A DNA stretch of 63,960 nt, filler included, from Salisapilia sapeloensis CBS 127946 (GCA_023334545.1; 11 parts of 11 records of this genome joined end to end with filler, not necessarily neighbours in it), one strand, 5' to 3'. Counted from the first letter of the whole stretch, positions 3,201-62,858 are shown. A program made the numbers and translations. The notes: a model not told the origin generated them from the sequence alone.

Positions 3201-4166
3201 TTCCAAGTTGAAGCTACATTATAGCTGTATAGGTATTTTCTTGTGCGTCCAAAATCAAATAGCATACCTTGGCTTTTTAATATGGATTTCGCGAAGTTGT
3301 TATATAGCACATCCAATCATGTCATATTGCACTCCTTGCTTTTGCTCGAAGCTTTGGCAATCCGCGAAGATACTTGCGATACATTCGCAGAAAATTGTTT
3401 GAAAATAGATATCGAACGCACAAATCAAACTGCGTGCTCCTACCTTTTGCAACAGCTAGAATCCATGTGCCTTCTTTTGCGGGCGAATACCACAATAGAT
3501 ACACTGTGCTGCATAAAAGATATTGATTCCTTGTATAATCACGCTAGCTTGCATTTGCCTCGCTAATAGCTCACTATGATGCACTCCACGTTAAATTATA
3601 ATATTGCCTCCCTGCTTGACTTATTCTCATTTTCATCAATACGTTTGAATACGCAGTAGGTGATGGAACAGGTTTTAATGGTATGCCAAACGTCTCATTT
3701 TAGCATCGCGGAAACCAAAAATAGCTCAACATAAGCTTCAAGTTACTTTTGCCATCAACTTTCCATACACAATACACTGCACAGTGACTTGAAAGTGATC
3801 AAGTGTACGCCAATAAGTACTTAAAGTGCATCATAAGTCCAGACGCGATCATTAAAGCGTGGATGAGAACATAGACTTCCAAGACGTTGTTAGCTTAACG
3901 TTTTTACAGCCAGTACTAACGCATGTGCATGTAGGGTACATCGTTCAAAAATAGATTATTTTTCTTGATCCACATATATTTTTATGCTGAGGTAGCCCAA
4001 GGCAGAGGTAGACCGAGGACGTGGTATTGCCCTTCCCACGCCCTAGCTCACTCCTTTCCATAGTTAAGAAAAGATCGTATACGTTGGAGGGACCAGCAAG
4101 CCGTATGTACAAAGATAGATCTGCTCTGCCTCCGAAGACCATTTACCTACTGCTTTTGCCTGCAGT

Positions 4167-48985: not shown

Positions 48986-51900
48986 CTATGGGTCGGAATG
49001 ACGTTTGTCGATGGGAACAATGCACTGCTACCCCAGTGCTTTGCCAAGGACACGAGCGGCAAGGTCTGTGGCCAGCCACTGTGGCCGGCCAAGTCGAACA
49101 ATGCGCGAGGTTCTGCCTCTTCCTCCTGCCGCGAACGAGAGTGCAGCCGACCGGCCGAGTTTGTGTGTTGTAATCGCTTCCATGACCGTGGACTCTGCCG
49201 TGGTTGCGGGAAGACGAGCCAGGAGCGTCTTCGGGGTCCTCCGTCTAAGCACGCTTCCACGCACATCTACGACGCGCAGGTGGCCAATTTCCACCACAAC
49301 GGAACGCTATTTCTGAAAGACTTCCAGTCTCGCCGCCCGCCCGAGAGAGACATCCACTGGGGAACGACGAAGCGATTGTCGTGTCCCAACCTCGTCGGTG
49401 TGGTGGTGCTGGCCAAGCGTGGAGGCGCCCTTCGTTTGACGGACGAGATATACTGGGGAAAGGTCGCTCTACACGGCGAGTCACGCCATGAGGCCCGTAA
49501 GCGTCAAGAAGGTTGTCTTGTGATTGAGTTCCTGGAGTATGACACAAGCGGGTCCGAAAACCCCATCATGAGCCGAGGCATGGAAGCAGGCAGCTCGGTC
49601 GCTATCATCGATTGCCAGACGTTCACGCCTGAGTTTGTGCCGGTGCTGAAAGCGCTGGAACGGCAGCGGTCGATGCCCACGCCTTTCGAGAATGGTTCCC
49701 TAGTTAACATCAACGCTAGTATCCAGTGCGACGTCGGCCAAGTTGGGAACATGGATGACGATGATGCTTATGCTCCCGATACACAGGCGGATGCTTATTA
49801 CCTTGCGGACGAAACGATTATGAACTCTGTAGACAACATTCTCGGAGACAGCAAATTGGATCCGATCGTCCAAATCCGCCGTCACCGCCACGTGTGCCGG
49901 GATCTGAAAGCAGAGTTGATATCGCTGCTCGTGGACTCCACCCTCGATCCTGGCCAGCTCCAGAGTCTTGAAAAAGCTTTGATTCACCCCGTCCACTGCA
50001 CGCTCGGACCCCCAGGTGCTGGAAAGTCGTATCTCGGAGTGGTGACTGTGCGAGCGCTCTTGCTTATCCGGAAGTACTGGCAGCGAGTGTTTCCATCGAT
50101 TGGCCAGCCGCCTATACTGGTTCTTTCCTACAAGAACCACGCCATTGACGAGTTTCTGCTCGACCTCGTCAAATCCGATCCATTTCTGGGTTATCAGACC
50201 GCCCAACAAGGCAACCGGTACACACGGCAAGGAGGGTTCAAGCCTCTCGTTCGCATCGGAGGAGGGTGCAGTGAGCCGAAACTAGCTCCCTATGGCGAGT
50301 ACAACTTGCGGTCGTCGATGCACAGCGTCGTACGCATCGAGAAAGAAATTGAGGAGTGCCTCCAAGCTCTAGACGCTACGAGTGTGGTACAGGGTGACAT
50401 TCTGTCCATCTTTGAGGCACGACTGGTGATCCAAGATCAGGCAAAGGCTGATGGAAAGGCGCAGAATAAAGAGGACCGTGGCATCCTTTTCGAGGCAGCT
50501 ATGAGCTTGGCTCGGTGCATCACCGCAGTCCACGAGATCAAGAGACTCCGTCACTCGAGTCACGTTGCCAACATGGGAGATAATACTCAAGACCATGACT
50601 TTTACGCCAAAGGCGGCGGAAGCTCGGATGATAGCGAAGAAGAAGAAGAGGAGACGGGTTCAGACACGGACGTGGAGCTCGGAAACAAGCTGCGAGATTT
50701 TGTCTATAGCCTGAACGCTCTAAGTGGAAGCGGAGTCAGCTCAGTTCCTCTCAACGTCAACGTTCTTTCTTCGCTGCATGTTGCTATCAAGCACTATGGC
50801 CCGGTTGCTTCCCATCCGATCGAGCTACTCTATCGCTGGATGACAGGGTTTAAGCCCAATCCACCGTGTGAATTCTCTCAGGACAAATGCTCCGAGGTTG
50901 CGACCGCAGGTGGATGCTACTGCCAACTGCACCGCTGCAACTATGAGGTGCAGGACGTCGGACAATGCACGAATGAAGTCGTGTTTGAAGGTGTAGCATT
51001 CTGTGTCCTGCACAAGTGCTCAGATACAGATTGCGCTGAGCCTCGTCTTTTCGAAGGGCAAAAGTACTGTATGGAGCACACGTGCTACATATGTCTCGAG
51101 CAAGGAGCGGCTCTACCCAACAAGGCAGCGGAAGCTCCACCTAGAAACACGTGCGAGGAGCATCCTCTGTGCTGGTACTCGGGTGCCAGTGGCGTATGCA
51201 GCAATCTGGCGACGACCACTTCAGACTGCTGCGAATTCCATAAGCCAGTGTGTTGCAAGGGAATGACGAGAAAAGGGAAGCCGTGCAAGTTGGATGCTTG
51301 GAAAGATGGAAATGGATACTGTCAGGCCCATAAGAAGCAGGGCGCCAATAGTGAAAGGGCTTCGAAAGCCGCTGTAGCCAGTGGTCCCAAGCCATCCGCA
51401 CCGTCGTACCAAAGTGTTCTCGAGCAAAAGCAATGCTCAGCGTTGAATCGCAAAGGCAAGCCTTGTAAGGGAACCGCCTTGCCTGGGCTTCCGTTTTGCG
51501 TGGACCACCGCAGCCAGTCTTCTGCGCAGACGAACACGAGCAGCTTTACTGCAAGTGTATTTTCGAGCGTCGGCCAGGCCTTAGGAGGTCAAGAGATGAT
51601 GCAGACGACTGCACAGGACTCCACTGAAGAGGGCTTGGAAGAGAAAGCTCCAGCTAGTGCAGTAGGCGACGATGGTCAGGACCTCGCGAGTAAGCCCGCT
51701 GCGAGCAACAACGACGATGAAGCTTCAAGCAAAGATGTGGATGAAGTGGGCTCTCACTCGTTCACGTCGTCCGATAGCTTCGTTGATGCAATTGATGCAG
51801 ACGCAGACGTGTTAGATGATGAAATCGAAGAGTCGGAGCACCTCCAGCATCTCCGAGAAGTGGGCGACGTGAACACCGTCGACCGTATGGAGGAAGAAAT

Positions 51901-54900
51901 AGTCGACGAAGATGATGAAATGGAGAAACTGTCGCCACTGGATACGGCCGACATGGACGGGGAAGGAGAGCTGATCGACACGACAGAATGGCAGTGGTCG
52001 TTCAGTTTCGAAAAGAGATGGGGCTGCATTCTGGCGTTGCTGCGAGAGTGGAGAGTGCTCGAGCAGGACCTTCGCACCGACGTCCGTGACTTGATCTCGG
52101 TCAAGAAAGTAAAGTTGCAGAACGAAAAGGTCAAAGCCAAGGCTCAAGTGTTCGAAGGCAAAGCTGTGATTGGAGGCACGATGACCGGTTGCGTGTCGCG
52201 TCTGGAGGCGGTTCGAGCGACCAAGCCGTTTTGCATCATCGTAGAAGAAGCGAGCGAGGTGCTCGAGCCGCTGCTCTTTTCCTGTCTCTCACCTACCACC
52301 TGTAAGCTGGAAATGATCGGCGACCATTACCAGCTCCAACCACAAGTGATGTCTCGCTTCGACTTTGAGAAGGTGAACAAGATCAGCATCTCACTTTTTG
52401 AGCGTCTCATTCGCGCACCGCCCGAGCACCAAGTACCTTATGACACACTGTCGGTTCAGCGACGTATGCGCCGAGATATCTGCGATCTCACACGTGAACT
52501 GTACACTGACATTGTGGAGATCGAGGACCACGAGCAATGCCAGCGGAAGACGATTGACTGGAAGTCAACAAGTGGTCTAGATGCATGGAGTATGAAGATT
52601 TCGCAGATGAGTCAACGTCCGCTTGATATTGTCGAAGGAAAAGGAAGAGAAGTTCCTGGTGTGGCACCGCACTTGTTCTTCTGGAAACACACTGGAAGCC
52701 AGGAGCGAGCACAAGTCGGGCTGAGTCGAGTGAATCCGCGGGAGGCGGACATGGTGGTGAATTTGGCGCAGTACCTGGTCCAGTGCGGTGTGCCGCATGA
52801 GTCGATTGCAATTCTCACGCCGTACAAGGGTCAGTTGATGCTTCTTCGGAAGCAGATCATGAGCACCAAGAGCTTTGTCAAGTCGATCAAAATTGGTCGA
52901 GGAGCCGAGAGGAAGACGGTTCCAAAGTGCGTCCTCTCTACGGTGGACCGTTTTCAAGGCGACGAAGCTGATATTACGCTCATCTCTCTTGTTATCGACG
53001 GAAAGTCGCGCACTCCATTTGTGAAACTCCGGAACCGGATGATCGTCTTGCTGAGCCGCGCGCGTATTGGGATGTTCATCGTCGGCAACGCGGACTACTT
53101 TGATCAAGTGTCTCACTGGCAGCAAACAATCGACCGTCTGAGTCAAAGCGCCCCGTCCGACAGTTTGCCAGCGTTGAACGCAAGCTGTGAAATGTATGAC
53201 GGAGCACGCATTGGGTCCGAGTTACCGCTTTGCTGCCCCGTGCATCGGTCGTCCAAGAAGGAGGCAAAGGCAGCCAGCGACCTCAAGCTGGGCTTTTGCC
53301 AGGTCGAGTGCACCGAGTCACTCAAGTGCGGACACGAGTGTGGGAAAAAGTGCCACTACCCAGACGTGAGCACGCACAAGTCCACATGTGACGTTGAGAT
53401 GGAGGTGCCGTGCATACGCCACGTTCAAAAGAAGCAATGCCACAAAGTATGCTGCGCTACTGGAGAGACCACATTTAAAGCCGCGCTCCGAAAGTACGAG
53501 TGTGACGTCAAGGTGAATATCCAGCTCCCTTGTCTACACGAGAAGGCGGTCACATGTGGCGAAGAAACGAAGATTCTGAACGAGTCATTAGCCCCGCCAA
53601 AGTGTATGGAAAGAGCCTTTACGCCGTACGTGTACCCCGATTGCCTGCATTCGCTCGACTGCAGCTGTGTCGAGTACTACTCGTACAAGGACGGAAACGT
53701 ACCCCATTGCACCAAGAAGACCGATTTCACGCCTCCGTGCGGCCACACTATCAGCGTCAACTGCTACCGGCGGAAGAGCCTTGTGGCCAATCCAGAGACG
53801 TTCGTATGCTCGCAGACAGTGTGGATGGAACTCCCTCGATGCGGTCACCAAGCTTGCGTGTCGTGTCCGCAAGCTCAGGCGCTCGTGCGGTGGAGCGGCC
53901 GTGGTCTCGAGGAGGCGGATGTCGTTCGGGAGGGCGAGGTATACGGGGAGATGGATTACCCGTGCACCGCCAAAGTCAGCTTTGTGCGTCGTTGCGGACA
54001 CCGAGAGGAGATGGTGTGTGAGCGAGCTTTCGCGAATGCGCTAGCTTCCTCTACGTGCCAGGAGAAGAAAGCGTTCCGAAACCCGGAATGCGGTCATATC
54101 TTCCACACGACCTGCTCCATGATAACAAAGCTGGTGCAAAAGGCTGCCCAGAACCTCGGCGCCTATGGCCAAACACCTCGAACGACGGCGGTGATCAGAG
54201 TCAAGGAAGGAACTGAGGATGCCGAGTTCCGGAACTTCAAGCTGAATGTCCAGTGCAAAGCCACTGTCACCGTCGAGCGAAGCTGCGGCCATGTGCAGGA
54301 GAAGCAGTGCCAAGATGCGCGCCACATCAAGGACAACTGCACCGAAAAGGTCATCACGGAACGACCAACGTGTCGTCATAAGGTCGTGCTACCCTGCAGC
54401 GATGCTATTCTACTCACCACATGGCACCCTTGGGACATTGCGACGGACGCTGCAACCGTGGATCTCTTCCGTGGAAGCTCCGTCTTACTCGACACTCTCT
54501 CGCCGCCGGATGAAGTGTCTCCGGTCTCGCTACCCGAGTGCACTCAATCGGTAACGCTGCGGCGAGCAAAAACTTGTGGTCATGATGTTCGAATGAAGTG
54601 TTGTGATGCGCTTCGATCTTTGCAAGGACAAGAGGACACAGAGAGTGCGCGCTGCAACGCCACAGTCGTAAAGAAGCTGTCATGCGGGCACGAGATGACA
54701 GCGACGTGCTGCACGAACGTCTCCAAGACGAAGTGCAAAGAGAAGGTGGAGAAACCTTGCTGGAACAGTGCCAAGTGTGGCCAGAACGTCTCTGTGCAGT
54801 GCTTTGCTTCTTCTATTGGTGCAGTGCAGTGCGACTCGAAGACGGATTGGACGTGTGCCGCAGGGCACACCTTCCAGGTGGCTGAGTGCCAGCTCGGTGT

Positions 54901-57900
54901 CGCTCAGGATTGTCCGTCCTGCGCTGTCGATAAGGTAGAGATGGAGAAAGATAACATCATCACGCTCGTCGAAGACGACGATGCAGAGCCGCTGAAGTGG
55001 ATGAACAAGTGTTTGGAACCCGCAATCCCGCCTCTTGCTTCCCAAGTTACCGCGTCTACGACACGAGGAGCAATGGTCGAATTTGCACAGCGGCAGTTGG
55101 CTCTTGTGGAGCGCTTTCAAAGCTGGATGGAGAGAGAGAAGGACATTTGGTCGCGTGCGCTGTTCCGCCCTCAAGCCGTTCCGATCTTTGGCATCCGGCA
55201 AGGGAAGAAGAACAAGATGAGCGAGAAGCTCGAGTCGTTCGAGCTGAAAGACTTTCCTTCGGCCCCAGGCGGTCGTGGCCTCGAGCTATATGAGGCGACA
55301 CAAGCAAACTTTGACGCGGTGACTTCGAGCAAATCCAAGCAAGTAATCGTGTTTGGTATCATGTACACGCTCGGCATCCTGTCCGACCCGAAGAGCTATC
55401 CGAAGAACGAGAAGTCTAAAAAGAAGCGACAGACACAGTCGCAAGCATTTGCTCAGCTGGATAAATGGATAACGACTCAGCAGAATAAGCACGGGTACGA
55501 CGCGATGTTCACGTCGAGCAGAAAGATGGCGAAAGACACTGTATTCAAACACGTCGGGAAGCTAATGCTGTGGGAGCCATTCACAGCGGTTCCGACCCAC
55601 GAGATGGAGTTGACGGGGGAGAATTACGATGCGATTCGACGCTGCCTATCCACCGAATCTTGCTGGAAGGAGGGTCATGAGCACGTTAAATTCAGTCGCG
55701 CATGGAAAGACAAAGAAACTTCTGGTGTGTCCGAATCTGCCGCTTCGAGCGAGGAATGGCGAAAGGTTGATGAACTACTGAGTACCTCGTTTGCGTGGGC
55801 GGATGGACTGGAGCTGGAACACCCTTGGAAGGGAAGTTCACTGTGCTGTGGCGAGCACACCTTGCCCGACCAAGTGAAGCGTAGACTCCAGAACAACCTT
55901 CATTTCATTCGAGACGCGCCCCATGCAGCGCCGAAAATTGACACGTCCAAGCGTCCTGGACCGTTTTCAGGCATCAAGCATCTTCAAAACGTGGTAGAGA
56001 ACCATCCGTTTGATGAAGCGCAGCTCTTCATGGCTCTTGAGCTACTCCACGTTTCAAGCTCGAATAGTACGTCCGACGTGGAAACATGTCTCAAAGAGTA
56101 CGTGGACCTGATGCAGTCCCAAAGACGCCCGTGCCACCCTCTCTTCGTGGTCGCAGCCGCTCGGACTGGTGCATGCTTGAACCCCACAGCGTCAGACTCT
56201 ACGGACCTACTAGCGCTTTTCCGTGTGCTGTATCCGGACGCGAGCGACATGTGGCTCGATCCAAAGGAGGGCGTGGCCCCTCTTTCTCCTGCATCCAACG
56301 TGTCGGCATCGAGAACGTTGGCTGGGTCCTCCGACGATATCCAGCAAGCGTGGTTGTTGCTGCAGCAGGAGTCTAGCATTCGATCCGATGCGATGGACGA
56401 GCTGCTAAAGATGGTCGGTTTGCGGAAAGTGAAACTCGCTGCGATCGAAATGTTCAAGAGCGCACTGCAGTTCCAAAAGATGACGGCAAAGCAGCAACAG
56501 AAGAATGTAATTTCCCATAACTACTGCTTCAGTGGAAATCCCGGTACTGGGAAGTCGGTCTCGGCTAAGCTCTTTGCTCAGATCCTGCACGACTCGGGGA
56601 CACGAAGAAAGAGCACTGCCGAGCTGTGCACCGCACAAGAGCTCAAGGACGGATCTTCGTCCGATTTTCGGAAAAAGGTGCAGAAAGCCATGGGCGGCGT
56701 GCTCTTCATCGACGAGTGCTACGAGCTAGACCCAGCGGCCGACGCAAAAGGCAAGCCGATCGTGGCGGAGCTGCTCACTGCCGCAGAGGATCATCGGGGA
56801 GACTTATCCATCATCCTCGCCGGGTACCAAGACGACATTCATGAGAAGCTGTACAAGTACAACGACGGCTTTGCAAGTCGCTTTGAAGAAGTCTACTTCG
56901 AGGACTTTGAGGAGTCAGAGCTGCGAGCGATATGGGATAGGCTGCTGCGAGAGCGAGAGTGGGCGGCCGAGGATATCTGCGGTCGCGTAGCTTGCCGACG
57001 CCTTGCTCGTGCCAGCGGACGAAAAGGCTTCGGGAACGCCCGTGAAGTTCGCAAGGTGTTCGAACGCGTCACCCAGCGAGCGATGAATCGGAGAGACTTT
57101 GACGGGTCGCTTGAGATCCGGCCGGTGGATATTCTTGGTGAGCGGCCGACTGAAAACCCGAAGTTGGCAGAGCTCCAGAAAGAGCTCGAGGGCAAGGTCG
57201 GCTGGAAGCGCATCAAGGCAGCTGTGCAGGAATTAATTGACGTGTGCGACGCCAACTACGAGCGGGAGCTGAAAGGGCAAGACACGGCCCCGGTGTTCTT
57301 GAGCCGCTTGCTTCTAGGCGCGCCGGGGACGGGCAAAACGACATTTGCCAGCATCTTTGGTCGGCTCCTTAGATATCTAAACTTCTTATCAAACGGCGAC
57401 GTCGTGATGAAAGCCGCGAGCGACTTTGTCGGGCAGTACATAGGCCAGTCGCAAACGAAAACGAACGATATTTTGAAGCTTGCGAAGGGCAAGGTACTGG
57501 TGATCGATGAAGCGTACGCTCTAAACGACAACCACTTTGGGAAGCAAGTGCTGGACGTACTTGTGGAAAAGGTGCAGGGAACAGAGAGCGACGACATAGC
57601 GGTCCTGCTACTTGGCTATGAAGAGAACATGCTGGAGATGCTGCGCACGCAGAACCCTGGACTTGCGCGTCGTTTTCCGAAGGAGTACGCGCTCTACTTT
57701 GATGACTACTCGGAGCACGAGCTGCTCGAAATCTTCCAGAAGCAGTGCGCAACGAAGCATGTTGCATGTCCTTGGAAAGTGTCCGAAATCGTGCTTCAGC
57801 GTCTGGCGATGCAGAAGAGACAAAAGCACTTTGGAAACGCTGGTGCTGTTCTAGCACTTCTTCACAATGCCATTGCAAAGGCCACGACTCGGACGGCGCC

Positions 57901-59227
57901 TGGTGAGTCGATTGTACTGACGGAAGAAGACGTCGAGAGCGACATGCACCGACGTGCACTTGACAGAGCGCCAGCCGGTAGGCGTCAGGATGGAAACTCA
58001 GATCCGCTGGCAGCACTGGATAAGCTTTATCGTGTCGACAACGTCAAGAAGGAACTAGTTCGCCTGAAAGCGTTGCTAGAGGTGGCGCAACGGGAAGGGT
58101 CGGAGGCTCCGAGCATTGGACACTTTGTCTTCCGCGGCGCACCAGGCACTGGTAAGACGACTGTCGCTCGCACGATGGCGCAGATTTTGCATGCGATGGG
58201 CGTCATCGCCACCGACAAGTTCGTAGAAACCTCTGGCTTGAATCTAACGGGAGAGTACGTCGGACAGACGAAGAAGAAGGTGGAGGAGCAGCTGGAGCAG
58301 GCGTGCGGCGGTCTGCTCTTCATTGACGAGGCGTACGAAGCTGGGAAGGGGCATTTCGGAGAGGAGGCGATGACATCGCTCTTGGCGGCAATGACCAATC
58401 CAAAGTACAGCGGGCTTGTCATCATTATCGCGGGTTACAGTCAAGAGCTGGATGAGATGCTGGATCGCAATGCCGGACTTAAGAGCCGCTTTACGCGCTT
58501 CTTGGACTTTCAGGATTGGGAGGTGGACGACTGTATTCAGTTCACCATTGAAAAGGCAAAGAAAGAGGACTTTGAGCTGGCACCAGACGCGATCGGATCG
58601 CTCTCGCAGACGTTCAGGGAACTTCGTCAGCTGCCTGGATTTGGAAACGGACGAGATGTCATAAAGGTATGGGAGGGCATGGTCGAGTATCGAGCTCAGC
58701 GTGTTCTGGGTAAGCCAGAGCTAGTTCGACAGCTGACAATGGAGGATGCCGATGCTGCAGGTCACCGGGTCGTTGAAAGCCGCATGCCACCGACCTTTAC
58801 AAAGCGGATGCAAAAGAACCCCCCGCCAGACCTTCCAGTAGCAATTGGTGCGGACTTTTCGAATGCGCCGCGACGATCTACAGACACTGCAAAATGTGGG
58901 ATCGAGGAGAAGCAGGAGCACAGCTTTATGTCCGACACGGACCATCGAGACCCCGGCGTCTCAGACGAAGTATGGGAAGAAGTGGCTGAAGCCAAAGCCG
59001 CATTTCAGAAATTAACGGAGGATGCTGAACGTTGTGCGGATCCGAAGAAAAAGGAAGACGCAAAAAAGAAGTTGAAAGACTTTCAAGCAGTGCAGAAGAA
59101 GTTGCGGCAGCTGGGCAAATGCCCTGTTGGCTTTGCGTGGCTAAAAGTTGCATGTGGGTGGCGGTGTGCTGGTGGCTCTCACGCGGTTACCGATGAACAA
59201 CTGGAGAAGCTCTTTACGGCAGGATAA
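48986..59227 (+). CDS. ZNFX1-like SF1 RNA helicase / NF-X1 zinc fingers / RZ-like finger / three CbbX-SpoVK-type AAA+ domains (>3409 aa, 5' truncated)
   Basis: Helicase motifs GPPGAGKS (50006), SYKNHAID, EEASE (52244), IGDHYQL, SLFERL, LTPYKGQ, TVDRFQG, SRAR (53054). Many CGH-type fingers 53231..54840. Walker A GNPGTGKS (56534), GAPGTGKT (57317), GAPGTGKT (58136), each with IDE Walker B. Frame open to the contig edge. Confidence 0.93.
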   Translation, partial: LWVGMTFVDGNNALLPQCFAKDTSGKVCGQPLWPAKSNNARGSASSSCRERECSRPAEFVCCNRFHDRGLCRGCGKTSQERLRGPPSKHASTHIYDAQVANFHHNGTLFLKDFQSRRPPERDIHWGTTKRLSCPNLVGVVVLAKRGGALRLTDEIYWGKVALHGESRHEARKRQEGCLVIEFLEYDTSGSENPIMSRGMEAGSSVAIIDCQTFTPEFVPVLKALERQRSMPTPFENGSLVNINASIQCDVGQVGNMDDDDAYAPDTQADAYYLADETIMNSVDNILGDSKLDPIVQIRRHRHVCRDLKAELISLLVDSTLDPGQLQSLEKALIHPVHCTLGPPGAGKSYLGVVTVRALLLIRKYWQRVFPSIGQPPILVLSYKNHAIDEFLLDLVKSDPFLGYQTAQQGNRYTRQGGFKPLVRIGGGCSEPKLAPYGEYNLRSSMHSVVRIEKEIEECLQALDATSVVQGDILSIFEARLVIQDQAKADGKAQNKEDRGILFEAAMSLARCITAVHEIKRLRHSSHVANMGDNTQDHDFYAKGGGSSDDSEEEEEETGSDTDVELGNKLRDFVYSLNALSGSGVSSVPLNVNVLSSLHVAIKHYGPVASHPIELLYRWMTGFKPNPPCEFSQDKCSEVATAGGCYCQLHRCNYEVQDVGQCTNEVVFEGVAFCVLHKCSDTDCAEPRLFEGQKYCMEHTCYICLEQGAALPNKAAEAPPRNTCEEHPLCWYSGASGVCSNLATTTSDCCEFHKPVCCKGMTRKGKPCKLDAWKDGNGYCQAHKKQGANSERASKAAVASGPKPSAPSYQSVLEQKQCSALNRKGKPCKGTALPGLPFCVDHRSQSSAQTNTSSFTASVFSSVGQALGGQEMMQTTAQDSTEEGLEEKAPASAVGDDGQDLASKPAASNNDDEASSKDVDEVGSHSFTSSDSFVDAIDADADVLDDEIEESEHLQHLREVGDVNTVDRMEEEIVDEDDEMEKLSPLDTADMDGEGELIDTTEWQWSFSFEKRWGCILALLREWRVLEQDLRTDVRDLISVKKVKLQNEKVKAKAQVFEGKAVIGGTMTGCVSRLEAVRATKPFCIIVEEASEVLEPLLFSCLSPTTCKLEMIGDHYQLQPQVMSRFDFEKVNKISISLFERLIRAPPEHQVPYDTLSVQRRMRRDICDLTRELYTDIVEIEDHEQCQRKTIDWKSTSGLDAWSMKISQMSQRPLDIVEGKGREVPGVAPHLFFWKHTGSQERAQVGLSRVNPREADMVVNLAQYLVQCGVPHESIAILTPYKGQLMLLRKQIMSTKSFVKSIKIGRGAERKTVPKCVLSTVDRFQGDEADITLISLVIDGKSRTPFVKLRNRMIVLLSRARIGMFIVGNADYFDQVSHWQQTIDRLSQSAPSDSLPALNASCEMYDGARIGSELPLCCPVHRSSKKEAKAASDLKLGFCQVECTESLKCGHECGKKCHYPDVSTHKSTCDVEMEVPCIRHVQKKQCHKVCCATGETTFKAALRKYECDVKVNIQLPCLHEKAVTCGEETKILNESLAPPKCMERAFTPYVYPDCLHSLDCSCVEYYSYKDGNVPHCTKKTDFTPPCGHTISVNCYRRKSLVANPETFVCSQTVWMELPRCGHQACVSCPQAQALVRWSGRGLEEADVVREGEVYGEMDYPCTAKVSFVRRCGHREEMVCERAFANALASSTCQEKKAFRNPECGHIFHTTCSMITKLVQKAAQNLGAYGQTPRTTAVIRVKEGTEDAEFRNFKLNVQCKATVTVERSCGHVQEKQCQDARHIKDNCTEKVITERPTCRHKVVLPCSDAILLTTWHPWDIATDAATVDLFRGSSVLLDTLSPPDEVSPVSLPECTQSVTLRRAKTCGHDVRMKCCDALRSLQGQEDTESARCNATVVKKLSCGHEMTATCCTNVSKTKCKEKVEKPCWNSAKCGQNVSVQCFASSIGAVQCDSKTDWTCAAGHTFQVAECQLGVAQDCPSCAVDKVEMEKDNIITLVEDDDAEPLKWMNKCLEPAIPPLASQVTASTTRGAMVEFAQRQLALVERFQSWMEREKDIWSRALFRPQAVPIFGIRQGKKNKMSEKLESFELKDFPSAPGGRGLELYEATQANFDAVTSSKSKQVIVFGIMYTLGILSDPKSYPKNEKSKKKRQTQSQAFAQLDKWITTQQNKHGYDAMFTSSRKMAKDTVFKHVGKLMLWEPFTAVPTHEMELTGENYDAIRRCLSTESCWKEGHEHVKFSRAWKDKETSGVSESAASSEEWRKVDELLSTSFAWADGLELEHPWKGSSLCCGEHTLPDQVKRRLQNNLHFIRDAPHAAPKIDTSKRPGPFSGIKHLQNVVENHPFDEAQLFMALELLHVSSSNSTSDVETCLKEYVDLMQSQRRPCHPLFVVAAARTGACLNPTASDSTDLLALFRVLYPDASDMWLDPKEGVAPLSPASNVSASRTLAGSSDDIQQAWLLLQQESSIRSDAMDELLKMVGLRKVKLAAIEMFKSALQFQKMTAKQQQKNVISHNYCFSGNPGTGKSVSAKLFAQILHDSGTRRKSTAELCTAQELKDGSSSDFRKKVQKAMGGVLFIDECYELDPAADAKGKPIVAELLTAAEDHRGDLSIILAGYQDDIHEKLYKYNDGFASRFEEVYFEDFEESELRAIWDRLLREREWAAEDICGRVACRRLARASGRKGFGNAREVRKVFERVTQRAMNRRDFDGSLEIRPVDILGERPTENPKLAELQKELEGKVGWKRIKAAVQELIDVCDANYERELKGQDTAPVFLSRLLLGAPGTGKTTFASIFGRLLRYLNFLSNGDVVMKAASDFVGQYIGQSQTKTNDILKLAKGKVLVIDEAYALNDNHFGKQVLDVLVEKVQGTESDDIAVLLLGYEENMLEMLRTQNPGLARRFPKEYALYFDDYSEHELLEIFQKQCATKHVACPWKVSEIVLQRLAMQKRQKHFGNAGAVLALLHNAIAKATTRTAPGESIVLTEEDVESDMHRRALDRAPAGRRQDGNSDPLAALDKLYRVDNVKKELVRLKALLEVAQREGSEAPSIGHFVFRGAPGTGKTTVARTMAQILHAMGVIATDKFVETSGLNLTGEYVGQTKKKVEEQLEQACGGLLFIDEAYEAGKGHFGEEAMTSLLAAMTNPKYSGLVIIIAGYSQELDEMLDRNAGLKSRFTRFLDFQDWEVDDCIQFTIEKAKKEDFELAPDAIGSLSQTFRELRQLPGFGNGRDVIKVWEGMVEYRAQRVLGKPELVRQLTMEDADAAGHRVVESRMPPTFTKRMQKNPPPDLPVAIGADFSNAPRRSTDTAKCGIEEKQEHSFMSDTDHRDPGVSDEVWEEVAEAKAAFQKLTEDAERCADPKKKEDAKKKLKDFQAVQKKLRQLGKCPVGFAWLKVACGWRCAGGSHAVTDEQLEKLFTAG

Positions 59228-60579
59228 CATGAAAACTCGTATTAAACTTTGCTTAAGAACTTGTTGCCTGATCTTTTTGCATGCACGCAAGCGTACCTTG
59301 GTCCCTATACTGGGCGCAAGCGATCTTGTCTTTCATTTTCTTGTTTATGACGCTAATTTACAACTACGAAGAGATCGATTATTAAACAGTGACTAGCTTG
59401 AATAGATAAGGATATGCGATGTCTGCAGAAGGGATATGCTTCAAAAAGTTAACAAGCATATCTTGACTATGGAATATTCATAATGCTGAAGAAGTATAAT
59501 GTTTGGTGAAGTTGGCTGCGCTGTTGAGATGTCAATTTAGAATAGTTTTTGGTAGAGCAGGATATTTGTTTTTCAAGCAATTTCACATATTCGATGCATC
59601 CCACAACAATGAACTCTGAAATGTTCAGCGATTTGATAAATGCGTCGTCGTAAATTCTCGTGTGGATGAAGTAGCATATAGGAAGCAACTCATGGCTTTC
59701 TATTTTAGCACTATAGCAATTAAGTGCAGTTCTTTCGACTAGTAAGGAAATCTCAAATACTCGATTGTTTGCTTCTACCCATATTATGGATAAGATCTCT
59801 TCGAATTGAAACTGTTCATAGCTGGACTGCATCATCAACAAAATTGCTTAGAGGCGTGAGGAATGAAGATGAATTGAGCTACAAGAGTCTACCCAGATAA
59901 GATGAATGTTTTTCAAACCGGTATCTATGCATTTGCTTAAGCGAATAAATGTAGTGATCGCTGACTTCCCATCTATTTAATCTGCCCACCCATGTTAATA
60001 CTATCGATATTTTCGGTCGTGATGCATGAGTGTTATTGAGGCCTTTATTACAAAAATGATCTCCAGGAGCATATAATTGGAAACATGACCGTGTGCAGGT
60101 AATCTTCGTGTGCCTTGATGTATATACGACTATTTCAAATAGAATAGATCACACGCAAACAATGAGCACAGAGGCCGTAGGAACTCCACTTGAAAATCAC
60201 CTTCTAATTTTTAAGCTTTAGTTTCACACTGCATTTGCTGATGAAGATCATTGGTAGAGCAGTGGCACGAAGCGTGGTAAAATTACGCAAGACCAAAGAG
60301 CACACGACTAATAGGGGGATCAAAGTATTCGAAATGTTTCCGATAACTCTGAAATCTAGGCACCTATAAATTTAGCTTTCCTATCCTATATCTCGTTTTC
60401 CGATTTCAAAATATCGAGTACCTCCAGAGGTATCCGATATCTAAATATTGGAATCGGATAAGTTTCAAGGACGAAACCATTTCTGTTTTAGCTTGTGTTG
60501 CCTGAAACAGTTAGCAACGCGTTCGAAGAAACGGCGTGAGAAGTACTAAAAGGAGCATTACACAAGGAGCGCTCCGGAA

Positions 60580-61295
60580 ATGGATGAGGAATGGCAAGCT
60601 GAAGATGCTACAGGTATGTCGGACGAAAACGTCGCTGTCGTATCGAAAACTTACCTGGCTACCGGTGACTACCTATTTCTCGTGACGTGGTTGGAGAACG
60701 AAACAAACTTTGAAAAGATTTATGGCGCCTCACGTACAACAGGAGTAGGCAAAGGTTATAAGAAAACAAAGATGGCTGGTTACGTAGAGATGGCTTCACA
60801 TCTCTACAAGTTTTCGAAGAACGAAAGCTTTCGATGATTGTCGGCTAAAAGCATGCAGCAGAGATGGGAACACTACGTAATGCGCTTCAAGAAAATTTAC
60901 AAAGTAGGACACAAACCGACCTTGGTTTATCTAAAACCGACATTAAAAAGGAGCGTCTATTACCCCAAAACTTAAGCAGCTATGCCCCCAGTTCAACCGA
61001 ATGGTTTGTATGTTCGGAAATCGGCCGAACGTAAGTCCACCCTCGAATTTACAACTTGGCCTTCCCGAAGGAGTTGCGGCTGGTGGTATTGTCACTTCGG
61101 CAAATGATATCACAGTCAAAAGCGTCGAATATCCATCAAGATGAGCTCGAAAGATTAAGTGAAGACCAATACAATGATGAAGTCGCTCCATGCGTATATC
61201 AAAGCAAGGAAAATGAAGAAGATGATGCTTTCTCAACTATGCGCACGGAAACACCGAAAAATTCGAGCTCGTCTGTCTTCGACGTAGATGTTTGA
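60580..61295 (+). pseudogene. Decayed Myb/SANT-like gene (possibly transposon-associated)
   Basis: LVTWLENETNFEKIYG...MASHL...*LSAKSMQQRWEHY.../TDLGLS.../KLKQLCPQFNRMVCMFGNRPNVSPP. One in-frame TGA (60835..60837) and at least two frameshifts are needed to join these blocks, which I recall from an oomycete multicopy family. Confidence 0.55.
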
Positions 61296-61707
61296 TCTAT
61301 GAATTGGGTATGTAGATTAGTTTCTCGTAGAAACGTGGGCTGGTTGAGATAGCTACGAAAGTGTGGAGATCGGTTGTTTTAAGATCCCACAAGCTTTCAA
61401 GTATCGCAGGTCGTCACTTTCCGATTTACTTTTATGCATGCTTAAAAAGGAGTAATATTTCCTCTGGTCGAGCTTTGGGTGTAACAACTAACTCGACCTC
61501 CTTAGTACACAATCACTTTTTCTTTTCTTATCTACGCCAGAGTTGAGCCACAGAAAGATACAAATTGACAAACATACCAAGTATACACAACTTTTTTCGA
61601 TGCTAGTACAGAAACCAACATTATCGACTGAAAACTACTATGTGTATAATATGTCCATGTACTCGCACTTCTTCTCTTCGTGTATTGGATCATCAGTTAT
61701 AGGAAAA

Positions 61708-62856
61708 TTAATCTTTCTTCACTACTGCTGGCTTCTCTTGGTACATTGTCACATTTTTACCGAGTGACAAGCCGTAGCGACTATTGTACTGTTCAAGCGT
61801 CTGAATGTCTTCATCTGCTCGACAAAAGTAGAGCTCTCTTTCGATGTGGTACATGAGGTGCGGTCGAATGTAGTGGAAGGCGACAGAGTCCGGCGCACAG
61901 CATTCTTCCTTGTTGCGAATTCCGCCAAGGTTTTGATGGTATAGTATCGACCATGGAGCCATCTTGTCTGGACTGAGCCAGTACATGTTATGCGGTTTAT
62001 CCCAGTGCCAGCGTTCCCTCCCTTTGTAGTCTCTCGTGTCCCACGGGTAGACGCTTTCCCACATCATACAGAACGAGATGGAGGTATCTTCCGGAAGCGT
62101 GCGGCCCATCGTGTTGGAAAGACAGGTATTGCCGTTCATGCGCTCAACAAAGCGGGTCAAGTAGAGCTTGTTCATGGCATATCCGGGTCCACCCGAGTTA
62201 AATACCCATCGATCCCATCGTGACACAAACTCTTCCTTAAGCTTTGGATCCACAATAAACTTTTCCACTTTCGCTTGCGTCAAGTTGAACCGATGCCCGA
62301 CTTGGATCGGCTCCGTCTTGTGTCGCATGACCATCTCTGGGCGACGAACGTACGCACGAACGTTGTCGACAATGACATATGCATCATCATCTGCCTTGTA
62401 GAACCAGTCGTAGTCATTTCGATAATGGTCATATACGTACTGGAGACTAACTTTTGTCTTTAGCCAGAGATGTTTGTGGTCAGATGGAACTTCAAAGCCT
62501 ATGACAGGGAAAGACAAGCTCCCAACGTCGATCGTACCGCTCACGTTGCTGAAAAACACGAGCTTATCACAGCGCTGGCCCCACGTTTCAGCAACCGACC
62601 GAGCTTTCGTCTCATGATACACCGATATTGTGTTCACGAAGCAAAAGAGGCGAGGGTAGATGCCAGTCTGCGAGCCGTTCTTGTACGGCCCTTTGTCCAC
62701 ATCGATAAGGCGCAGAGCTGGCCGAGATTGCTCGAGATCCTTAGCACACAAAGTCTTTCGGCTCCACCGAGCGGAGGCGTTTTGGTTTTTAGGCTTGAAT
62801 GTCGCCGTATCACTGACTGCATCGGTAGTGGCAAGATAGACGAAGCTCACAAGTAC
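61708..62856 (-). CDS. GT31 beta-1,3-galactosyltransferase, C1GALT1-like (5' truncated)
   Basis: RLFCFVNT, TWGQRCDKLVFFS, LWLKTK, YDWFYKADDDAY (DxD), FNSGGPGY, EDTSISFC, AFHYI. Confidence 0.92.
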   Translation of the reverse strand, partial: VLVSFVYLATTDAVSDTATFKPKNQNASARWSRKTLCAKDLEQSRPALRLIDVDKGPYKNGSQTGIYPRLFCFVNTISVYHETKARSVAETWGQRCDKLVFFSNVSGTIDVGSLSFPVIGFEVPSDHKHLWLKTKVSLQYVYDHYRNDYDWFYKADDDAYVIVDNVRAYVRRPEMVMRHKTEPIQVGHRFNLTQAKVEKFIVDPKLKEEFVSRWDRWVFNSGGPGYAMNKLYLTRFVERMNGNTCLSNTMGRTLPEDTSISFCMMWESVYPWDTRDYKGRERWHWDKPHNMYWLSPDKMAPWSILYHQNLGGIRNKEECCAPDSVAFHYIRPHLMYHIERELYFCRADEDIQTLEQYNSRYGLSLGKNVTMYQEKPAVVKKD

Positions 62857-62858
62857 CA

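What the first reader, a model, noticed from the sequence alone, without database searches (positions are those of the whole stretch)
48986..59227. Giant ZNFX1-like helicase fused to an RZ-like finger and three AAA+ ATPases: candidate innate-immunity or RNA-silencing machine
Seen: one uninterrupted 10.2-kb frame with a complete Upf1-like SF1 helicase (EEASE motif II as in ZNFX1-type proteins), about ten NF-X1-like Cys/His fingers, an RZ-like finger, a roughly 480-aa unassigned region, three AAA+ modules and a terminal Cys/His motif. Established: ZNFX1 proteins act in viral RNA sensing (human), inherited silencing (C. elegans ZNFX-1) and the RDRC complex (S. pombe Hrr1); RNF213 is an immune E3 that couples tandem AAA+ domains to an RZ finger. 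Inference: this protein unites the ZNFX1 RNA-sensing half with an RNF213-like AAA+ and E3 logic in one chain. I recall uncharacterised fungal predicted proteins with helicase plus CbbX-like AAA domains but know of no functional study, and none in oomycetes.
Basis: partly seen in the sequence, partly recalled or inferred. Interest (0 to 1): 0.85.

Follow-up and report, generated by a model that had tools for sequence, protein, structure and literature searches.

The report
ZNFX1-like helicase fused to AAA+ ATPases
This is a real, transcribed, intron-free oomycete gene for a giant protein (over 3,413 residues) that joins a ZNFX1-type RNA helicase to a PARP-like domain, a TPR-like domain and three CbbX-type ATPase motors; it belongs to an old, widespread eukaryotic family that nobody appears to have studied.

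Summary
Window 48986-59227 (+) is one open frame of 3,413 codons, cut at its 5' end by the piece edge; orthologues carry 100-370 more N-terminal residues. Four RNA runs hold it as single gap-free contigs that stop 15-112 nt after the stop codon, so it is not a chimera.

Domains, N to C:
- A UPF1-like SF1 helicase with VEEASE motif II and a ~620-aa insertion.
- Eleven CxH..C fingers; the first ones align to human ZNFX1.
- A degenerate RZ-like knuckle. It keeps the zinc ligands and the nucleophile Cys but lacks the base His.
- The "unassigned" 480 aa, which fold as a PARP-like domain without the H-Y-E triad plus a TPR-like domain.
- Three intact CbbX/EccA-type AAA+ modules.
- A near-invariant C-terminal motif (CPxGFxW..WRCxGGSH).

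More than 90 co-linear relatives exist in oomycetes, chytrids, diatoms, plasmodiophorids, cnidarians and Diplonema. They form a clade well apart from canonical ZNFX1. All are annotated "hypothetical", and I found no paper on them.

My best guess, which is inferred, is an RNA-triggered helicase-plus-unfoldase that remodels RNPs in RNA surveillance, silencing or defence.

The parts
48986..49945 (+). Conserved N-terminal region (aa 1-320) with a Cys-rich module. The true N-terminus lies left of the piece edge.
   Evidence: Identity to family members is 0.25-0.51 per 50-aa bin. The conserved pattern GMTFxxGNxALxPxC..C..C..H..G.C..C is seen. Orthologues extend 100-370 aa further upstream.
49943..50185 (+). 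Start of helicase lobe 1A, with motif I GPPGAGKS (aa 341-348, nt 50006-50029).
   Evidence: Pfam AAA_11 covers aa 320-396. Motif I is invariant in the family apart from A for T in this protein.
50183..52045 (+). A helicase insertion of about 620 aa, at the position of ZNFX1 insertion 1C. It holds six [F/Y/C]CxxH knuckles (aa 645-842) and an acidic stretch (aa 861-1000, 31% D/E).
   Evidence: Regex and composition. Weak DUF5763 and zf-TRM13_CCCH hits. Conservation is low. Human ZNFX1 has a large 1C insertion with an acidic plug helix (10.1101/2025.10.14.682297).
52058..53125 (+). Helicase motif II (VEEASE, nt 52241-52258) through lobe 2A (motifs III-VI).
   Evidence: Pfam AAA_11 covers aa 1025-1124 and AAA_12 covers aa 1134-1369. 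The region aligns to human ZNFX1 9q9z residues 1049-1350. UPF1, Aquarius, SEN1 and DNA2 hits appear.
53138..54790 (+). Cys/His finger stalk: eleven C-x-H-x5-6-C units.
   Evidence: Positions are given. The first fingers align to the human ZNFX1 NFX1-type fingers, residues 1352-1450. Orthologues carry Pfam PF26600 zf-CHCC_shd and PF26601 zf-CHCC_ins.
54848..54922 (+). RZ-like knuckle W-x-C1957-x3-H1961-x6-C1968-x7-C1976-P-x-C1979. It has no IGGxxH and no base His.
   Evidence: Pfam PF20173 is sub-threshold. hhalign against canonical RZ gives 81% probability, E 1.2e-5. C, H, C, C, C are invariant in 30 family members.
54986..55633 (+). PARP-like (ADP-ribosyltransferase-fold) domain without a conserved H-Y-E triad: a pseudo-PARP.
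   Evidence: The AF2 model has pLDDT about 70-93 here. VIA Z is 8.9 for RCD1, 8.6-8.9 for SRO1, 8.0 for the TASOR pseudo-PARP and 7.2-8.3 for PARP10/13/14/15 and tankyrase. Foldseek on PDB, Swiss-Prot and AFDB gives PARP and MbcT hits. An ESM Atlas PARP cluster gives TM 0.64. No invariant His, Tyr or Glu. No sequence-level PARP match.
55835..56323 (+). TPR-like helical repeat domain just before the AAA+ modules.
   Evidence: VIA Z is 7-8.5 against Sgt1, PP5, Naa15, PlcR and other TPR domains over model residues 300-462. This is weak for a helical fold.
56420..57097 (+). AAA+ module 1: Walker A GNPGTGKS at nt 56534-56557, Walker B LFIDEC at nt 56702-56719. It has no CbbX-type GxY[IV]G pore-loop motif.
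   Evidence: Pfam AAA. Family alignment. Module HMMs. AF2 model.
57200..57907 (+). AAA+ module 2: Walker A GAPGTGKT at nt 57317-57346, Walker B LVIDEA at nt 57497-57514, with motifs FVGQYIGQS and NPGLARRF.
58025..58717 (+). AAA+ module 3: Walker A at nt 58136-58165, Walker B at nt 58316-58333, with motifs LTGEYVGQT and NAGLKSRF. This is the module most like CbbX and EccA1.
   Evidence: phmmer gives EccA1 9lur 3.8e-38 and CbbX 3syk 4.7e-32, with alignments. Foldseek gives CbbX at TM-by-target 0.68-0.70 and 30% identity.
58964..59113 (+). Long helical hairpin, preceded by a disordered linker (aa ~3270-3318).
   Evidence: AF2 helices 888-910 and 914-937; pLDDT is below 50 for residues 831-879.
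59120..59224 (+). C-terminal conserved motif C-P-x-G-F-x-W-x5-G-W-R-C-x-G-G-S-H-x-V-x-D-x2-L, predicted as three short strands plus a helix.
   Evidence: Invariant C, P, G, W, G, W, C, G, H in 25 sequences. A profile search finds 1,390 representative proteins at E<=1e-3. The motif is unrelated to RZ.
59225..59339 (+). Stop codon (59225-59227) and a short 3' UTR. The transcript contigs end at 59242, 59276, 59330 and 59339.
   Evidence: read laying.

Best explanation
SHOWN. The piece carries the 5'-truncated, intron-free, transcribed gene of an oomycete member of an ancient clade of ZNFX1-like proteins that I could not find described.

The chain runs as follows:
- a UPF1-type SF1 RNA helicase with ZNFX1's deviant EEAx Walker B and a large insertion holding Cys/His knuckles and an acidic stretch;
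- a stalk of 11 NFX1/CHCC-type zinc fingers;
- a degenerate RZ-type knuckle;
- a PARP-fold domain lacking a catalytic triad;
- a TPR-like domain;
- three CbbX/EccA-type AAA+ modules with intact Walker A/B, and a CbbX-like pore-loop Tyr in modules 2 and 3;
- a helical hairpin;
- a near-invariant small Cys/His motif.

INFERRED mechanism.
1. The helicase loads on single-stranded RNA and hydrolyses ATP only when RNA displaces the acidic part of its insertion, as in human ZNFX1.
2. This brings the C-terminal AAA+ array to the RNA-bound target. The TPR-like and pseudo-PARP domains act as substrate or adaptor docks, as TPR does in EccA and as pseudo-PARPs do in TASOR, RCD1 and ZAP.
3. The AAA+ modules pull on polypeptide tails to unfold or strip proteins from that RNP. 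To do so they probably have to complete a ring by self-association.
4. The RZ-like Cys might accept ubiquitin, but without the base His this is doubtful.

INFERRED role: RNA surveillance against viruses, transposons or aberrant transcripts, by analogy with ZNFX1, ZNFX-1 and Hrr1.
For: Gene reality:
- The ORF is uninterrupted.
- GC3 is uniform at 0.57-0.66, like the neighbouring gene at 0.59.
- Four RNA runs from two samples each give a single contig with 0 mismatches, gaps or joints over 53400-59276 and 56900-59339.
- Those contigs end 15-112 nt after the stop codon, and depth is zero over the next 3.5 kb.
- One contig is 11,651 nt long, so it reaches about 1.3 kb left of the piece.

Family:
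- 51 co-linear full-length homologues at 35-47% identity, and 102 with the helicase-finger region.
- All motifs are conserved.
- The P. cactorum orthologue is also a single exon.

Domains:
- Pfam.
- Human ZNFX1 9q9z at 5.5e-45, EccA1 at 1e-36, CbbX at 4e-30.
- PARP-like fold from four structure libraries, including a search that does not rely on Foldseek.

RNA role:
- Orthologues in other lineages add N-terminal CCCH fingers, RRMs or RanBP2 fingers.
- ZNFX1's RNA-gated ATPase and acidic plug are described in 10.1101/2025.10.14.682297.

The C-terminal motif travels with CbbX-type AAA. 28 of 48 sampled hits have PF00004. It also occurs in fungal helicase, NACHT-like and ubiquitin-like-domain proteins.
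Against: - No experiment exists for any family member.
- The number of AAA+ modules varies (3, 4 or 5), so a simple 'dimer of three makes a hexamer' model cannot be general.
- AF2 gives no confident inter-module geometry (pTM 0.49).
- The PARP-like assignment rests on predicted structure only. Z of 8-9 is at the upper edge of what the tool calls common, and there is no sequence signal.
- The TPR-like match is weak for a helical fold.
- Homology of the acidic stretch to ZNFX1's plug helix was not tested.
- The RZ-like finger lacks the catalytic His, and no Miz/Z-RING was found, so the ubiquitin arm may be absent.
- The link to immunity or silencing is by analogy with distant paralogues at only 25-31% identity.
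Confidence: 0.55

Rival explanations
1. It is a housekeeping RNP or RNA quality-control machine, not a defence or silencing factor. A UPF1-like helicase is coupled to an unfoldase that recycles or disassembles ordinary mRNPs, stalled translation or decay complexes, or granules.
For: The closest solved helicases after ZNFX1 are UPF1, Aquarius, SEN1 and SMUBP-2. The gene is expressed in all four RNA runs, apparently without special induction. The phylogeny broadly follows organismal groups, as expected for a conserved cellular function.
Against: The distribution is patchy. In these searches the family turned up in no plant, Dikarya fungus or vertebrate, which is unusual for core machinery. The C-terminal motif also occurs in NACHT-like and other conflict-type fungal proteins. 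Pseudo-PARP and RZ-like elements are typical of immune or silencing proteins.
Confidence: 0.25
2. This is the reader's model: a ZNFX1 orthologue that works as an E3 ubiquitin ligase, with an active RZ finger regulated by an RNF213-like AAA+ core.
For: The RZ-like knuckle keeps the four zinc ligands and the Cys at the nucleophile position in all 30 family members. hhalign against canonical RZ gives 81% probability. In RNF213 and ZNFX1, ATP-dependent modules regulate RZ activity (10.1101/2025.09.05.674436).
Against: The general-base His and the IGGxxH segment are absent, and the finger is below Pfam's gathering score. No conserved Miz/Z-RING was found. The AAA+ modules are CbbX/EccA-type, not dynein/RNF213-type. 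The domain order is the reverse of RNF213. The family is a separate clade from canonical ZNFX1.
Confidence: 0.15
3. It is an artefact or foreign DNA: an assembly or gene-model chimera of a helicase gene and an AAA+ gene, or a gene brought in by a virus or mobile element.
For: Size and domain count are unusual. Some public orthologue models are fused to kinases or carry odd names. The flanking DNA is much more AT-rich, at 40% GC.
Against: The same co-linear architecture occurs in more than 50 independent genomes and transcriptomes. RNA contigs span the junction without joints. The DNA contig is continuous. GC3 is uniform and equals the neighbouring gene's. There are no repeats or mobile-element ORFs nearby. 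The window protein sits inside the peronosporalean oomycete clade.
Confidence: 0.03

Closest known systems
Human ZNFX1 (also C. elegans ZNFX-1 and S. pombe Hrr1)
   Same: It shares the UPF1-like SF1 helicase with a deviant EEAx Walker B. It also has a very large insertion in lobe 1A with an acidic segment, and NFX1-type zinc fingers directly after the helicase. An RZ-type knuckle follows, with the same Zn-ligand and nucleophile-Cys spacing (10.1101/2025.10.14.682297).
   Different: Identity to canonical RZ-type ZNFX1 proteins is only 25-31%, and the family is a separate clade. The RZ-like element is internal, truncated and lacks the base His. No Miz/Z-RING was detected. The protein has about 1,450 extra C-terminal residues (pseudo-PARP, TPR-like, three AAA+ modules and the terminal motif). 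Whether an armadillo domain is present is unknown, because the 5' end is missing.
CbbX (red-type Rubisco activase) and mycobacterial EccA1
   Same: Each of the three modules is a CbbX/SpoVK/EccA-type AAA+ with AAA_lid_6, the NxGLxSRF motif and, in modules 2 and 3, the GxY[IV]G pore-loop position. EccA1 scores 3.8e-38 and CbbX 4.7e-32. From my own knowledge, not tested here, EccA1 likewise has a TPR domain in front of its AAA+ domain.
   Different: CbbX and EccA have one AAA+ module per chain and form homohexamers. Here 3 modules (4 or 5 in relatives) are in tandem in a chain that also carries an RNA helicase. There is no link to Rubisco or to type VII secretion.
RNF213
   Same: It is also a giant protein that combines ATPase modules with an RZ-type finger, and it works in cell-autonomous immunity.
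   Different: RNF213 has six dynein-like AAA units followed by an E3 module with RING and RZ. Here the AAA+ modules are classical CbbX-type, lie C-terminal to the RZ-like knuckle, and number three. No RING was found.
Pseudo-PARP domains: TASOR (HUSH complex), RCD1/SRO, ZAP/PARP13, PARP9
   Same: The predicted ART/PARP fold has no H-Y-E triad. The best structural matches are exactly these inactive PARP domains (Z 7.2-8.9, about 150 of about 180 residues aligned).
   Different: There is no detectable sequence similarity, the domain context is different, and function is unknown.

Membership tests
ZNFX1/Hrr1-type helicases | UPF1-like SF1 helicase core with motifs I-VI | tested here: met
   Pfam AAA_11 and AAA_12. 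PDB ZNFX1, UPF1 and Aquarius hits. Motifs are conserved.
ZNFX1/Hrr1-type helicases | Deviant Walker B, EEAx instead of DExx | tested here: met
   VEEASE at aa 1086-1091 is invariant in the family. Human ZNFX1 has EEAA.
ZNFX1/Hrr1-type helicases | Large regulatory insertion 1C with an acidic plug helix | tested here: inconclusive
   There is an insertion of about 620 aa at the corresponding place, with a 31% D/E stretch. Homology to the plug helix was not tested.
ZNFX1/Hrr1-type helicases | NFX1-type zinc-finger stalk directly after the helicase | tested here: met
   The region aligns to 9q9z residues 1352-1450. There are eleven CxH..C units. Pfam PF01422 itself gave no hit. Orthologues carry zf-CHCC_shd and zf-CHCC_ins.
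ZNFX1/Hrr1-type helicases | RZ finger: Zn ligands C-H-C-C and a nucleophile Cys | tested here: met
   C1957, H1961, C1976, C1979 and C1968 have the human spacing, except one residue fewer between the nucleophile Cys and the next Zn-ligand Cys. They are invariant in 30 members. hhalign gives 81% probability.
ZNFX1/Hrr1-type helicases | RZ finger: general-base His (IGGxxH) and a Pfam PF20173 score above the cut-off | tested here: not met
   There is no conserved His after CPxC. The score is 14.8-19.3 bits against a cut-off of 27. Only 10 of 30 members give even weak hits.
ZNFX1/Hrr1-type helicases | Miz / Z-RING E2-binding domain | tested here: inconclusive
   Only sub-threshold RING-type hits. 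The CGHIFHTTC element is not conserved as a RING. No structural model of this region was made.
ZNFX1/Hrr1-type helicases | N-terminal armadillo dimerisation domain | not testable with these tools
   The 5' end lies outside the piece. The N-termini of oomycete orthologues gave no Pfam hit.
ZNFX1/Hrr1-type helicases | Groups with canonical ZNFX1 in similarity and phylogeny (orthology) | tested here: not met
   Family members score at least 327 bits, and canonical PF20173/PF25396 proteins at most 127 bits. The two groups split with 100% SH-aLRT on a quick tree.
CbbX/EccA/SpoVK-type AAA+ | Classical AAA+ core with Walker A GxxGxGKT and Walker B hhhhDE | tested here: met
   All three modules have them, and they are conserved family-wide.
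CbbX/EccA/SpoVK-type AAA+ | AAA_lid_6 lid and the NxGLxSRF motif; best matches are CbbX and EccA | tested here: met
   PF17866 at 1.4e-17. EccA1 at 3.8e-38 and CbbX at 4.7e-32. Foldseek CbbX at TM 0.70.
CbbX/EccA/SpoVK-type AAA+ | Pore-loop aromatic residue (CbbX GQYIG) | tested here: met
   Module 3 GEYVG aligns to CbbX GQYIG. Module 2 has GQYIG. Module 1 lacks it.
CbbX/EccA/SpoVK-type AAA+ | Homohexameric ring | not testable with these tools
   Only a monomer model was made, with pTM 0.49. The module number varies from 3 to 5 in relatives.
RNF213 | Six dynein-like AAA units followed by an E3 module with RING and RZ | tested here: not met
   There are three CbbX-type modules. AAA_5 appears only as an overlapping weak hit. 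There is no RING. The RZ-like knuckle precedes the AAA+ modules.
PARP / ADP-ribosyltransferases | ART fold | tested here: met
   Predicted structure only. Z is 7.2-8.9 against many PARP domains, covering about 150 of 180 residues, in four libraries. Confidence is moderate.
PARP / ADP-ribosyltransferases | Catalytic H-Y-E (or R-S-E) triad and a sequence match to PF00644 | tested here: not met
   No invariant His, Tyr or Glu in 30 sequences; the invariant residues are two Pro, and Gly, Asn and Asp are nearly invariant. No Pfam or PDB sequence hit.

The most novel reading that the evidence does not exclude
This family ('ZNFX1-AAA') is an ancient eukaryotic RNA-triggered effector that has not been recognised. 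A ZNFX1-type helicase senses foreign or aberrant RNA. It then directly drives a built-in CbbX-type unfoldase, docked through a pseudo-PARP/TPR adaptor, to dismantle viral or transposon RNPs. The C-terminal CPxGFxW..WRCxGGSH element would be a new small domain, possibly metal-binding or oligomerising, shared with fungal NACHT-like and helicase conflict proteins.
Probability: 0.3. Interest if true: 0.8.

Novelty: new variant of a known kind. Interest (0 to 1): 0.62.

Why it matters
ZNFX1-type helicases sit at the centre of antiviral RNA sensing in humans, inherited RNAi in nematodes and heterochromatic RNAi in fission yeast. Their effector logic is only now being worked out.

This family shows a different, conserved solution. 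The same kind of helicase and finger stalk is fused to protein-remodelling AAA+ motors, a pseudo-PARP and a TPR-like dock instead of, or in addition to, an E3 module. It occurs in crop-pathogenic oomycetes, plasmodiophorids, chytrids, diatoms and cnidarians.

If it acts in RNA surveillance, it offers three things:
- a tractable entry into oomycete and diatom defence against viruses and transposons;
- a natural experiment on how RNA sensing is coupled to effector ATPases;
- two new domain assignments, a cryptic PARP-like fold and a widespread C-terminal motif with 1,390 representative protein clusters and no Pfam family in the copy searched.

Tried and rejected
- ESM Atlas feature search with the C-terminal 69 aa gave nothing above noise (best score 0.61).
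- I tested whether the C-terminal motif is a second or split RZ finger. hhalign probability is 1.9%, so I rejected this.
- I tested CGHIFHTTC at aa 1702 as a RING or Miz element. It is not conserved as such and is just another CGH finger.
- Sequence evidence for PARP: Pfam on the region gave only the RZ hit. A profile of 30 sequences against PDB gave only chance hits at E about 1.
- A search for stand-alone relatives of the pseudo-PARP/TPR module found only a fragment of the same family from Peronospora destructor.
- 'Three modules dimerise into a hexamer' as a general rule is weakened by relatives with 4 and 5 modules.
- Foreign or mobile origin: GC3 is uniform and host-like, and there are no repeats or recognisable ORFs in the 2.5-kb AT-rich spacer.
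- Literature searches for this architecture (ZNFX1 with AAA+, Phytophthora, oomycete, CbbX or zf-CHCC) found nothing relevant.
- The careful maximum-likelihood tree did not finish in time, so only the quick tree is reported.
Full report
**1. The observation**

Within the piece (48986-62858), the + strand holds one frame of 3,413 sense codons from the very first base to TAA at 59225-59227. The first ATG (48998) falls in a motif, GMTF, that is internal and conserved in relatives. Relatives carry 100-370 more residues upstream. The frame is therefore cut by the piece edge and the true start is missing.

GC is 53-57% across the ORF, and GC3 is even along it at 0.57-0.66. The neighbouring gene has GC3 of 0.59. 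The 2.5-kb spacer downstream is 40% GC and has no repeats or recognisable ORFs.

**2. Is it one gene?**

Four RNA-type runs from two samples of one study each hold the locus as a single contig. There are 0 mismatches, 0 gaps and 0 joints over 53400-59276 and over 56900-59339.

All four contigs end at 59242, 59276, 59330 or 59339, which is 15-112 nt after the stop codon. Depth is zero across the following 3.5 kb, including the next gene. A DNA run, in contrast, is continuous across this stretch.

This pattern shows that the libraries are RNA and that the mRNA ends just after the stop. It also shows there is no intron or join between the finger stalk, the middle domains and the AAA+ modules. One contig is 11,651 nt long. 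If it is co-linear, which I infer but did not check, it starts about 1.3 kb left of the piece, which fits the missing N-terminus.

The P. cactorum orthologue is also a single 11,754-nt exon.

**3. Anatomy (aa numbered from 48986)**

- *Helicase.* Pfam finds AAA_11 (aa 320-396 and 1025-1124) and AAA_12 (aa 1134-1369). The best solved relative is human ZNFX1 (9q9z, 5.5e-45), followed by Aquarius, UPF1, SEN1 and DNA2. Motif I is GPPGAGKS (aa 341-348) and motif II is VEEASE (aa 1086-1091). This matches the deviant EEAx Walker B described for ZNFX1.
- *Insertion.* About 620 residues lie between the two helicase parts, at the place of ZNFX1's insertion 1C. They include six [F/Y/C]CxxH knuckles (aa 645-842) and a 31% D/E stretch (aa 861-1000). 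Human ZNFX1 is auto-inhibited by an acidic helix in insertion 1C. Homology of the two acidic elements was not tested.
- *Finger stalk.* Eleven C-x-H-x5-6-C units follow the helicase (aa 1448-1908). The first ones align residue by residue to the NFX1-type fingers of human ZNFX1. Orthologues are tagged with the newer Pfam families zf-CHCC_shd and zf-CHCC_ins.
- *RZ-like knuckle, aa 1955-1979.* The pattern is W-x-C-x3-H-x6-C-x7-C-P-x-C. The four zinc-ligand positions and the Cys at the position of human C1860 are invariant in 30 relatives. hhalign against three canonical RZ fingers gives 81% probability and E 1.2e-5 over 28 columns. However, the IGGxxH segment with the general-base His (human H1881) is absent, and Pfam's RZ model stays below its cut-off. 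It is an RZ-derived knuckle whose catalytic competence is doubtful.
- *The 'unassigned' 480 residues.* AlphaFold2 with a 30-sequence alignment gave a confident model (mean pLDDT 81.9) with two domains.
  - *First domain (aa ~2001-2216).* It matches ADP-ribosyltransferase/PARP domains in every library tried.
    - Foldseek on PDB, Swiss-Prot and AFDB clusters returns PARP9/10/14, tankyrase, SRO/RCD1, MbcT and diphtheria toxin.
    - VIA-align gives Z 8.9 for RCD1, 8.6-8.9 for SRO1, 8.0 for the TASOR pseudo-PARP, and 7.2-8.3 for PARP10/13/14/15 and tankyrase, with about 150 of about 180 residues aligned. The same ranking appears in the search that does not rely on Foldseek.
    - An ESM Atlas PARP cluster gives TM 0.64 by target.
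    - The Z values are only at the upper edge of what the tool calls common, and there is no sequence-level signal. I rate the fold assignment at about 75%.
    - No His, Tyr or Glu is invariant in this domain across 30 sequences. If it is a PARP fold, it is a pseudo-enzyme like its best matches.
  - *Second domain (aa ~2284-2446).* It resembles TPR domains with Z of 7-8.5, which is weak for a helical fold.
- *AAA+ modules.* Three modules cover aa 2479-2704, 2739-2974 and 3014-3244.
  - Each has Walker A GxPGTGK[ST], Walker B hhhhDE[AC]Y, the NxG[LF]xSRF/RRF motif and a lid (PF00004 at 3e-41, AAA_lid_6 at 1.4e-17). These features are conserved across the family.
  - Module 3 alone scores 3.8e-38 against EccA1 and 4.7e-32 against CbbX. 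Its GEYVG aligns to CbbX's GQYIG pore-loop position.
  - Module 2 has GQYIG. Module 1 lacks this motif.
  - Foldseek's best match is CbbX, at TM 0.68-0.70 and 30% identity.
  - These are classical CbbX/EccA/SpoVK-type modules, not dynein/RNF213-type.
- *C-terminus.* After a disordered linker and a long helical hairpin, the protein ends in C-P-x-G-F-x-W-x5-G-W-R-C-x-G-G-S-H-x-V-x-D-x2-L. It is predicted as three short strands plus a helix.
  - C, P, G, W, G, W, C, G and H are invariant in 25 sequences.
  - A 46-position profile finds 1,390 representative proteins at E<=1e-3, usually at the extreme C-terminus.
  - 28 of 48 sampled hits carry CbbX-type AAA.
  - Others are a basidiomycete SF1 helicase, a NACHT-like (NPHP3_N) fragment, a ubiquitin-like-domain protein and proteins with up to 16 tandem copies. 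They come from basidiomycetes, ascomycetes, a lichen and a euglenid.
  - The motif has no Pfam model in the copy searched and is unrelated to RZ.
  - With only two Cys and one His invariant, its chemistry is open.

**4. The family**

A full-length search found 51 co-linear proteins at 35-47% identity. They come from these groups:
- Oomycetes: Phytophthora, Peronospora, Bremia, Nothophytophthora, [Pythium] brassicae, Saprolegnia, Aphanomyces.
- Chytrids.
- Diatoms.
- Spongospora.
- Chromera.
- Diplonema.

All are 'hypothetical' or carry only generic names.

A search with the helicase-finger region added Thraustotheca, Plasmodiophora, Hydra, Clytia and a beetle record. It also showed a sharp gap: family members score at least 327 bits, while canonical RZ- or ZNFX1-domain proteins score at most 127 bits at 25-31% identity.

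A quick ML tree separates the two groups with 100% SH-aLRT. It places the window protein inside a 99%-supported clade of peronosporalean oomycetes, outside both the Phytophthora-type and Pythium-type subclades. The careful tree search did not finish.

The number of AAA+ modules is 3, 4 or 5 depending on lineage, and the extra ones are copies of module 3. In other lineages the N-terminus has gained CCCH fingers, RRMs or RanBP2 fingers. This independently points to RNA as the substrate.

**5. How it probably works**

*Shown:* the architecture, the conservation of all NTPase motifs, transcription as one mRNA, and membership of a distinct ZNFX1-like clade.

*Inferred:*
- The helicase binds and tracks on single-stranded RNA and may be gated by its acidic insertion, as in ZNFX1.
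- The finger stalk acts as a rigid spacer.
- The pseudo-PARP and TPR-like domains act as docking modules.
- The CbbX-type modules thread and remodel proteins on the bound RNP. CbbX does this with the Rubisco large-subunit tail and EccA is thought to do it with secretion substrates; both statements are from my own knowledge.

Ring completion by self-association is plausible, since ZNFX1 dimerises and polymerises. It is unproven, and the variable module number argues against a simple 3+3 model.

A ubiquitin-transfer role for the RZ-like Cys is possible, but it is weakened by the missing His and the absence of a detectable Miz/Z-RING.

The biological role, whether antiviral, anti-transposon or other RNA surveillance, rests on analogy.

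**6. Comparison and novelty**

The protein works like a ZNFX1-type helicase joined to an EccA/CbbX-type motor. It is not an orthologue of canonical ZNFX1, and it fails the defining features of RNF213.

I found no paper on this architecture. The two recent ZNFX1 mechanism preprints do not mention it.

It is a new variant of a known kind. Its sequences are already in databases, but it is uncharacterised. Two domain assignments made here are, as far as I could find, new: the pseudo-PARP and the widespread terminal motif.

Noticed in passing
window 61708-62850 (-): A 380-aa ORF with a Fringe-like glycosyltransferase domain (PF02434 at 8.4e-11, weak Galactosyl_T). It runs convergent to the giant gene. 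Its depth is zero in all four RNA runs that express the giant gene.
   Followed up: partly
window 59340-61707: A spacer of about 2.4 kb at 40% GC between the two genes. It has no ORF with a Pfam hit, no direct or inverted repeats, and is not transcribed in the four RNA runs.
   Followed up: yes
P0052, P0053, P0117 (hits of the C-terminal-motif profile): Some proteins consist largely of tandem copies of the CPxG[FY]xW..[WY]RCxGGxH unit. P0052 has 16 matched stretches, each preceded by a short helix. No Pfam family in the copy searched covers the unit. It looks like an undescribed small eukaryotic domain.
   Followed up: partly
family members P0004, P0030, P0221, P0222, P0237 and others: The number of tandem AAA+ modules differs by lineage. 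There are 3 in the window protein, Pythium-like oomycetes, chytrids and Hydra. There are 4 in Phytophthora, Peronospora, Bremia and diatoms. There are 5 in three other sequences. The extra modules are duplicates of module 3.
   Followed up: partly
public orthologue records: Several orthologues carry misleading automatic names or fused gene models, including 'Serine/threonine-protein kinase mph1', 'M-phase phosphoprotein 8', 'SWIM-type domain-containing', 'replication-associated recombination protein RarA' and 'Protein kinase domain-containing'. A beetle (Zophobas morio) record sits on a very long branch, which may reflect contamination or transfer.
   Followed up: no
window 50006-50029, 56534-56557, 56702-56719, 59183-59191: The window protein deviates from otherwise (near-)invariant family residues at several motifs. 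Helicase motif I is GPPGAGKS (family GPPGTGKS). AAA1 Walker A ends in GKS (most have GKT). AAA1 Walker B is DECY (family DEAY). The terminal motif is SHAV (family SHFV). It also has a long terminal branch (0.65) in the tree.
   Followed up: no
AFDB cluster and ESM Atlas hits to model m8803e2b2c8e4: B-box zinc-finger proteins of Phytophthora infestans (D0MWT3), Aphanomyces and Tetrahymena align over almost the whole pseudo-PARP plus helical model at low TM. They may carry a related two-domain module. The sequence search did not confirm this.
   Followed up: partly
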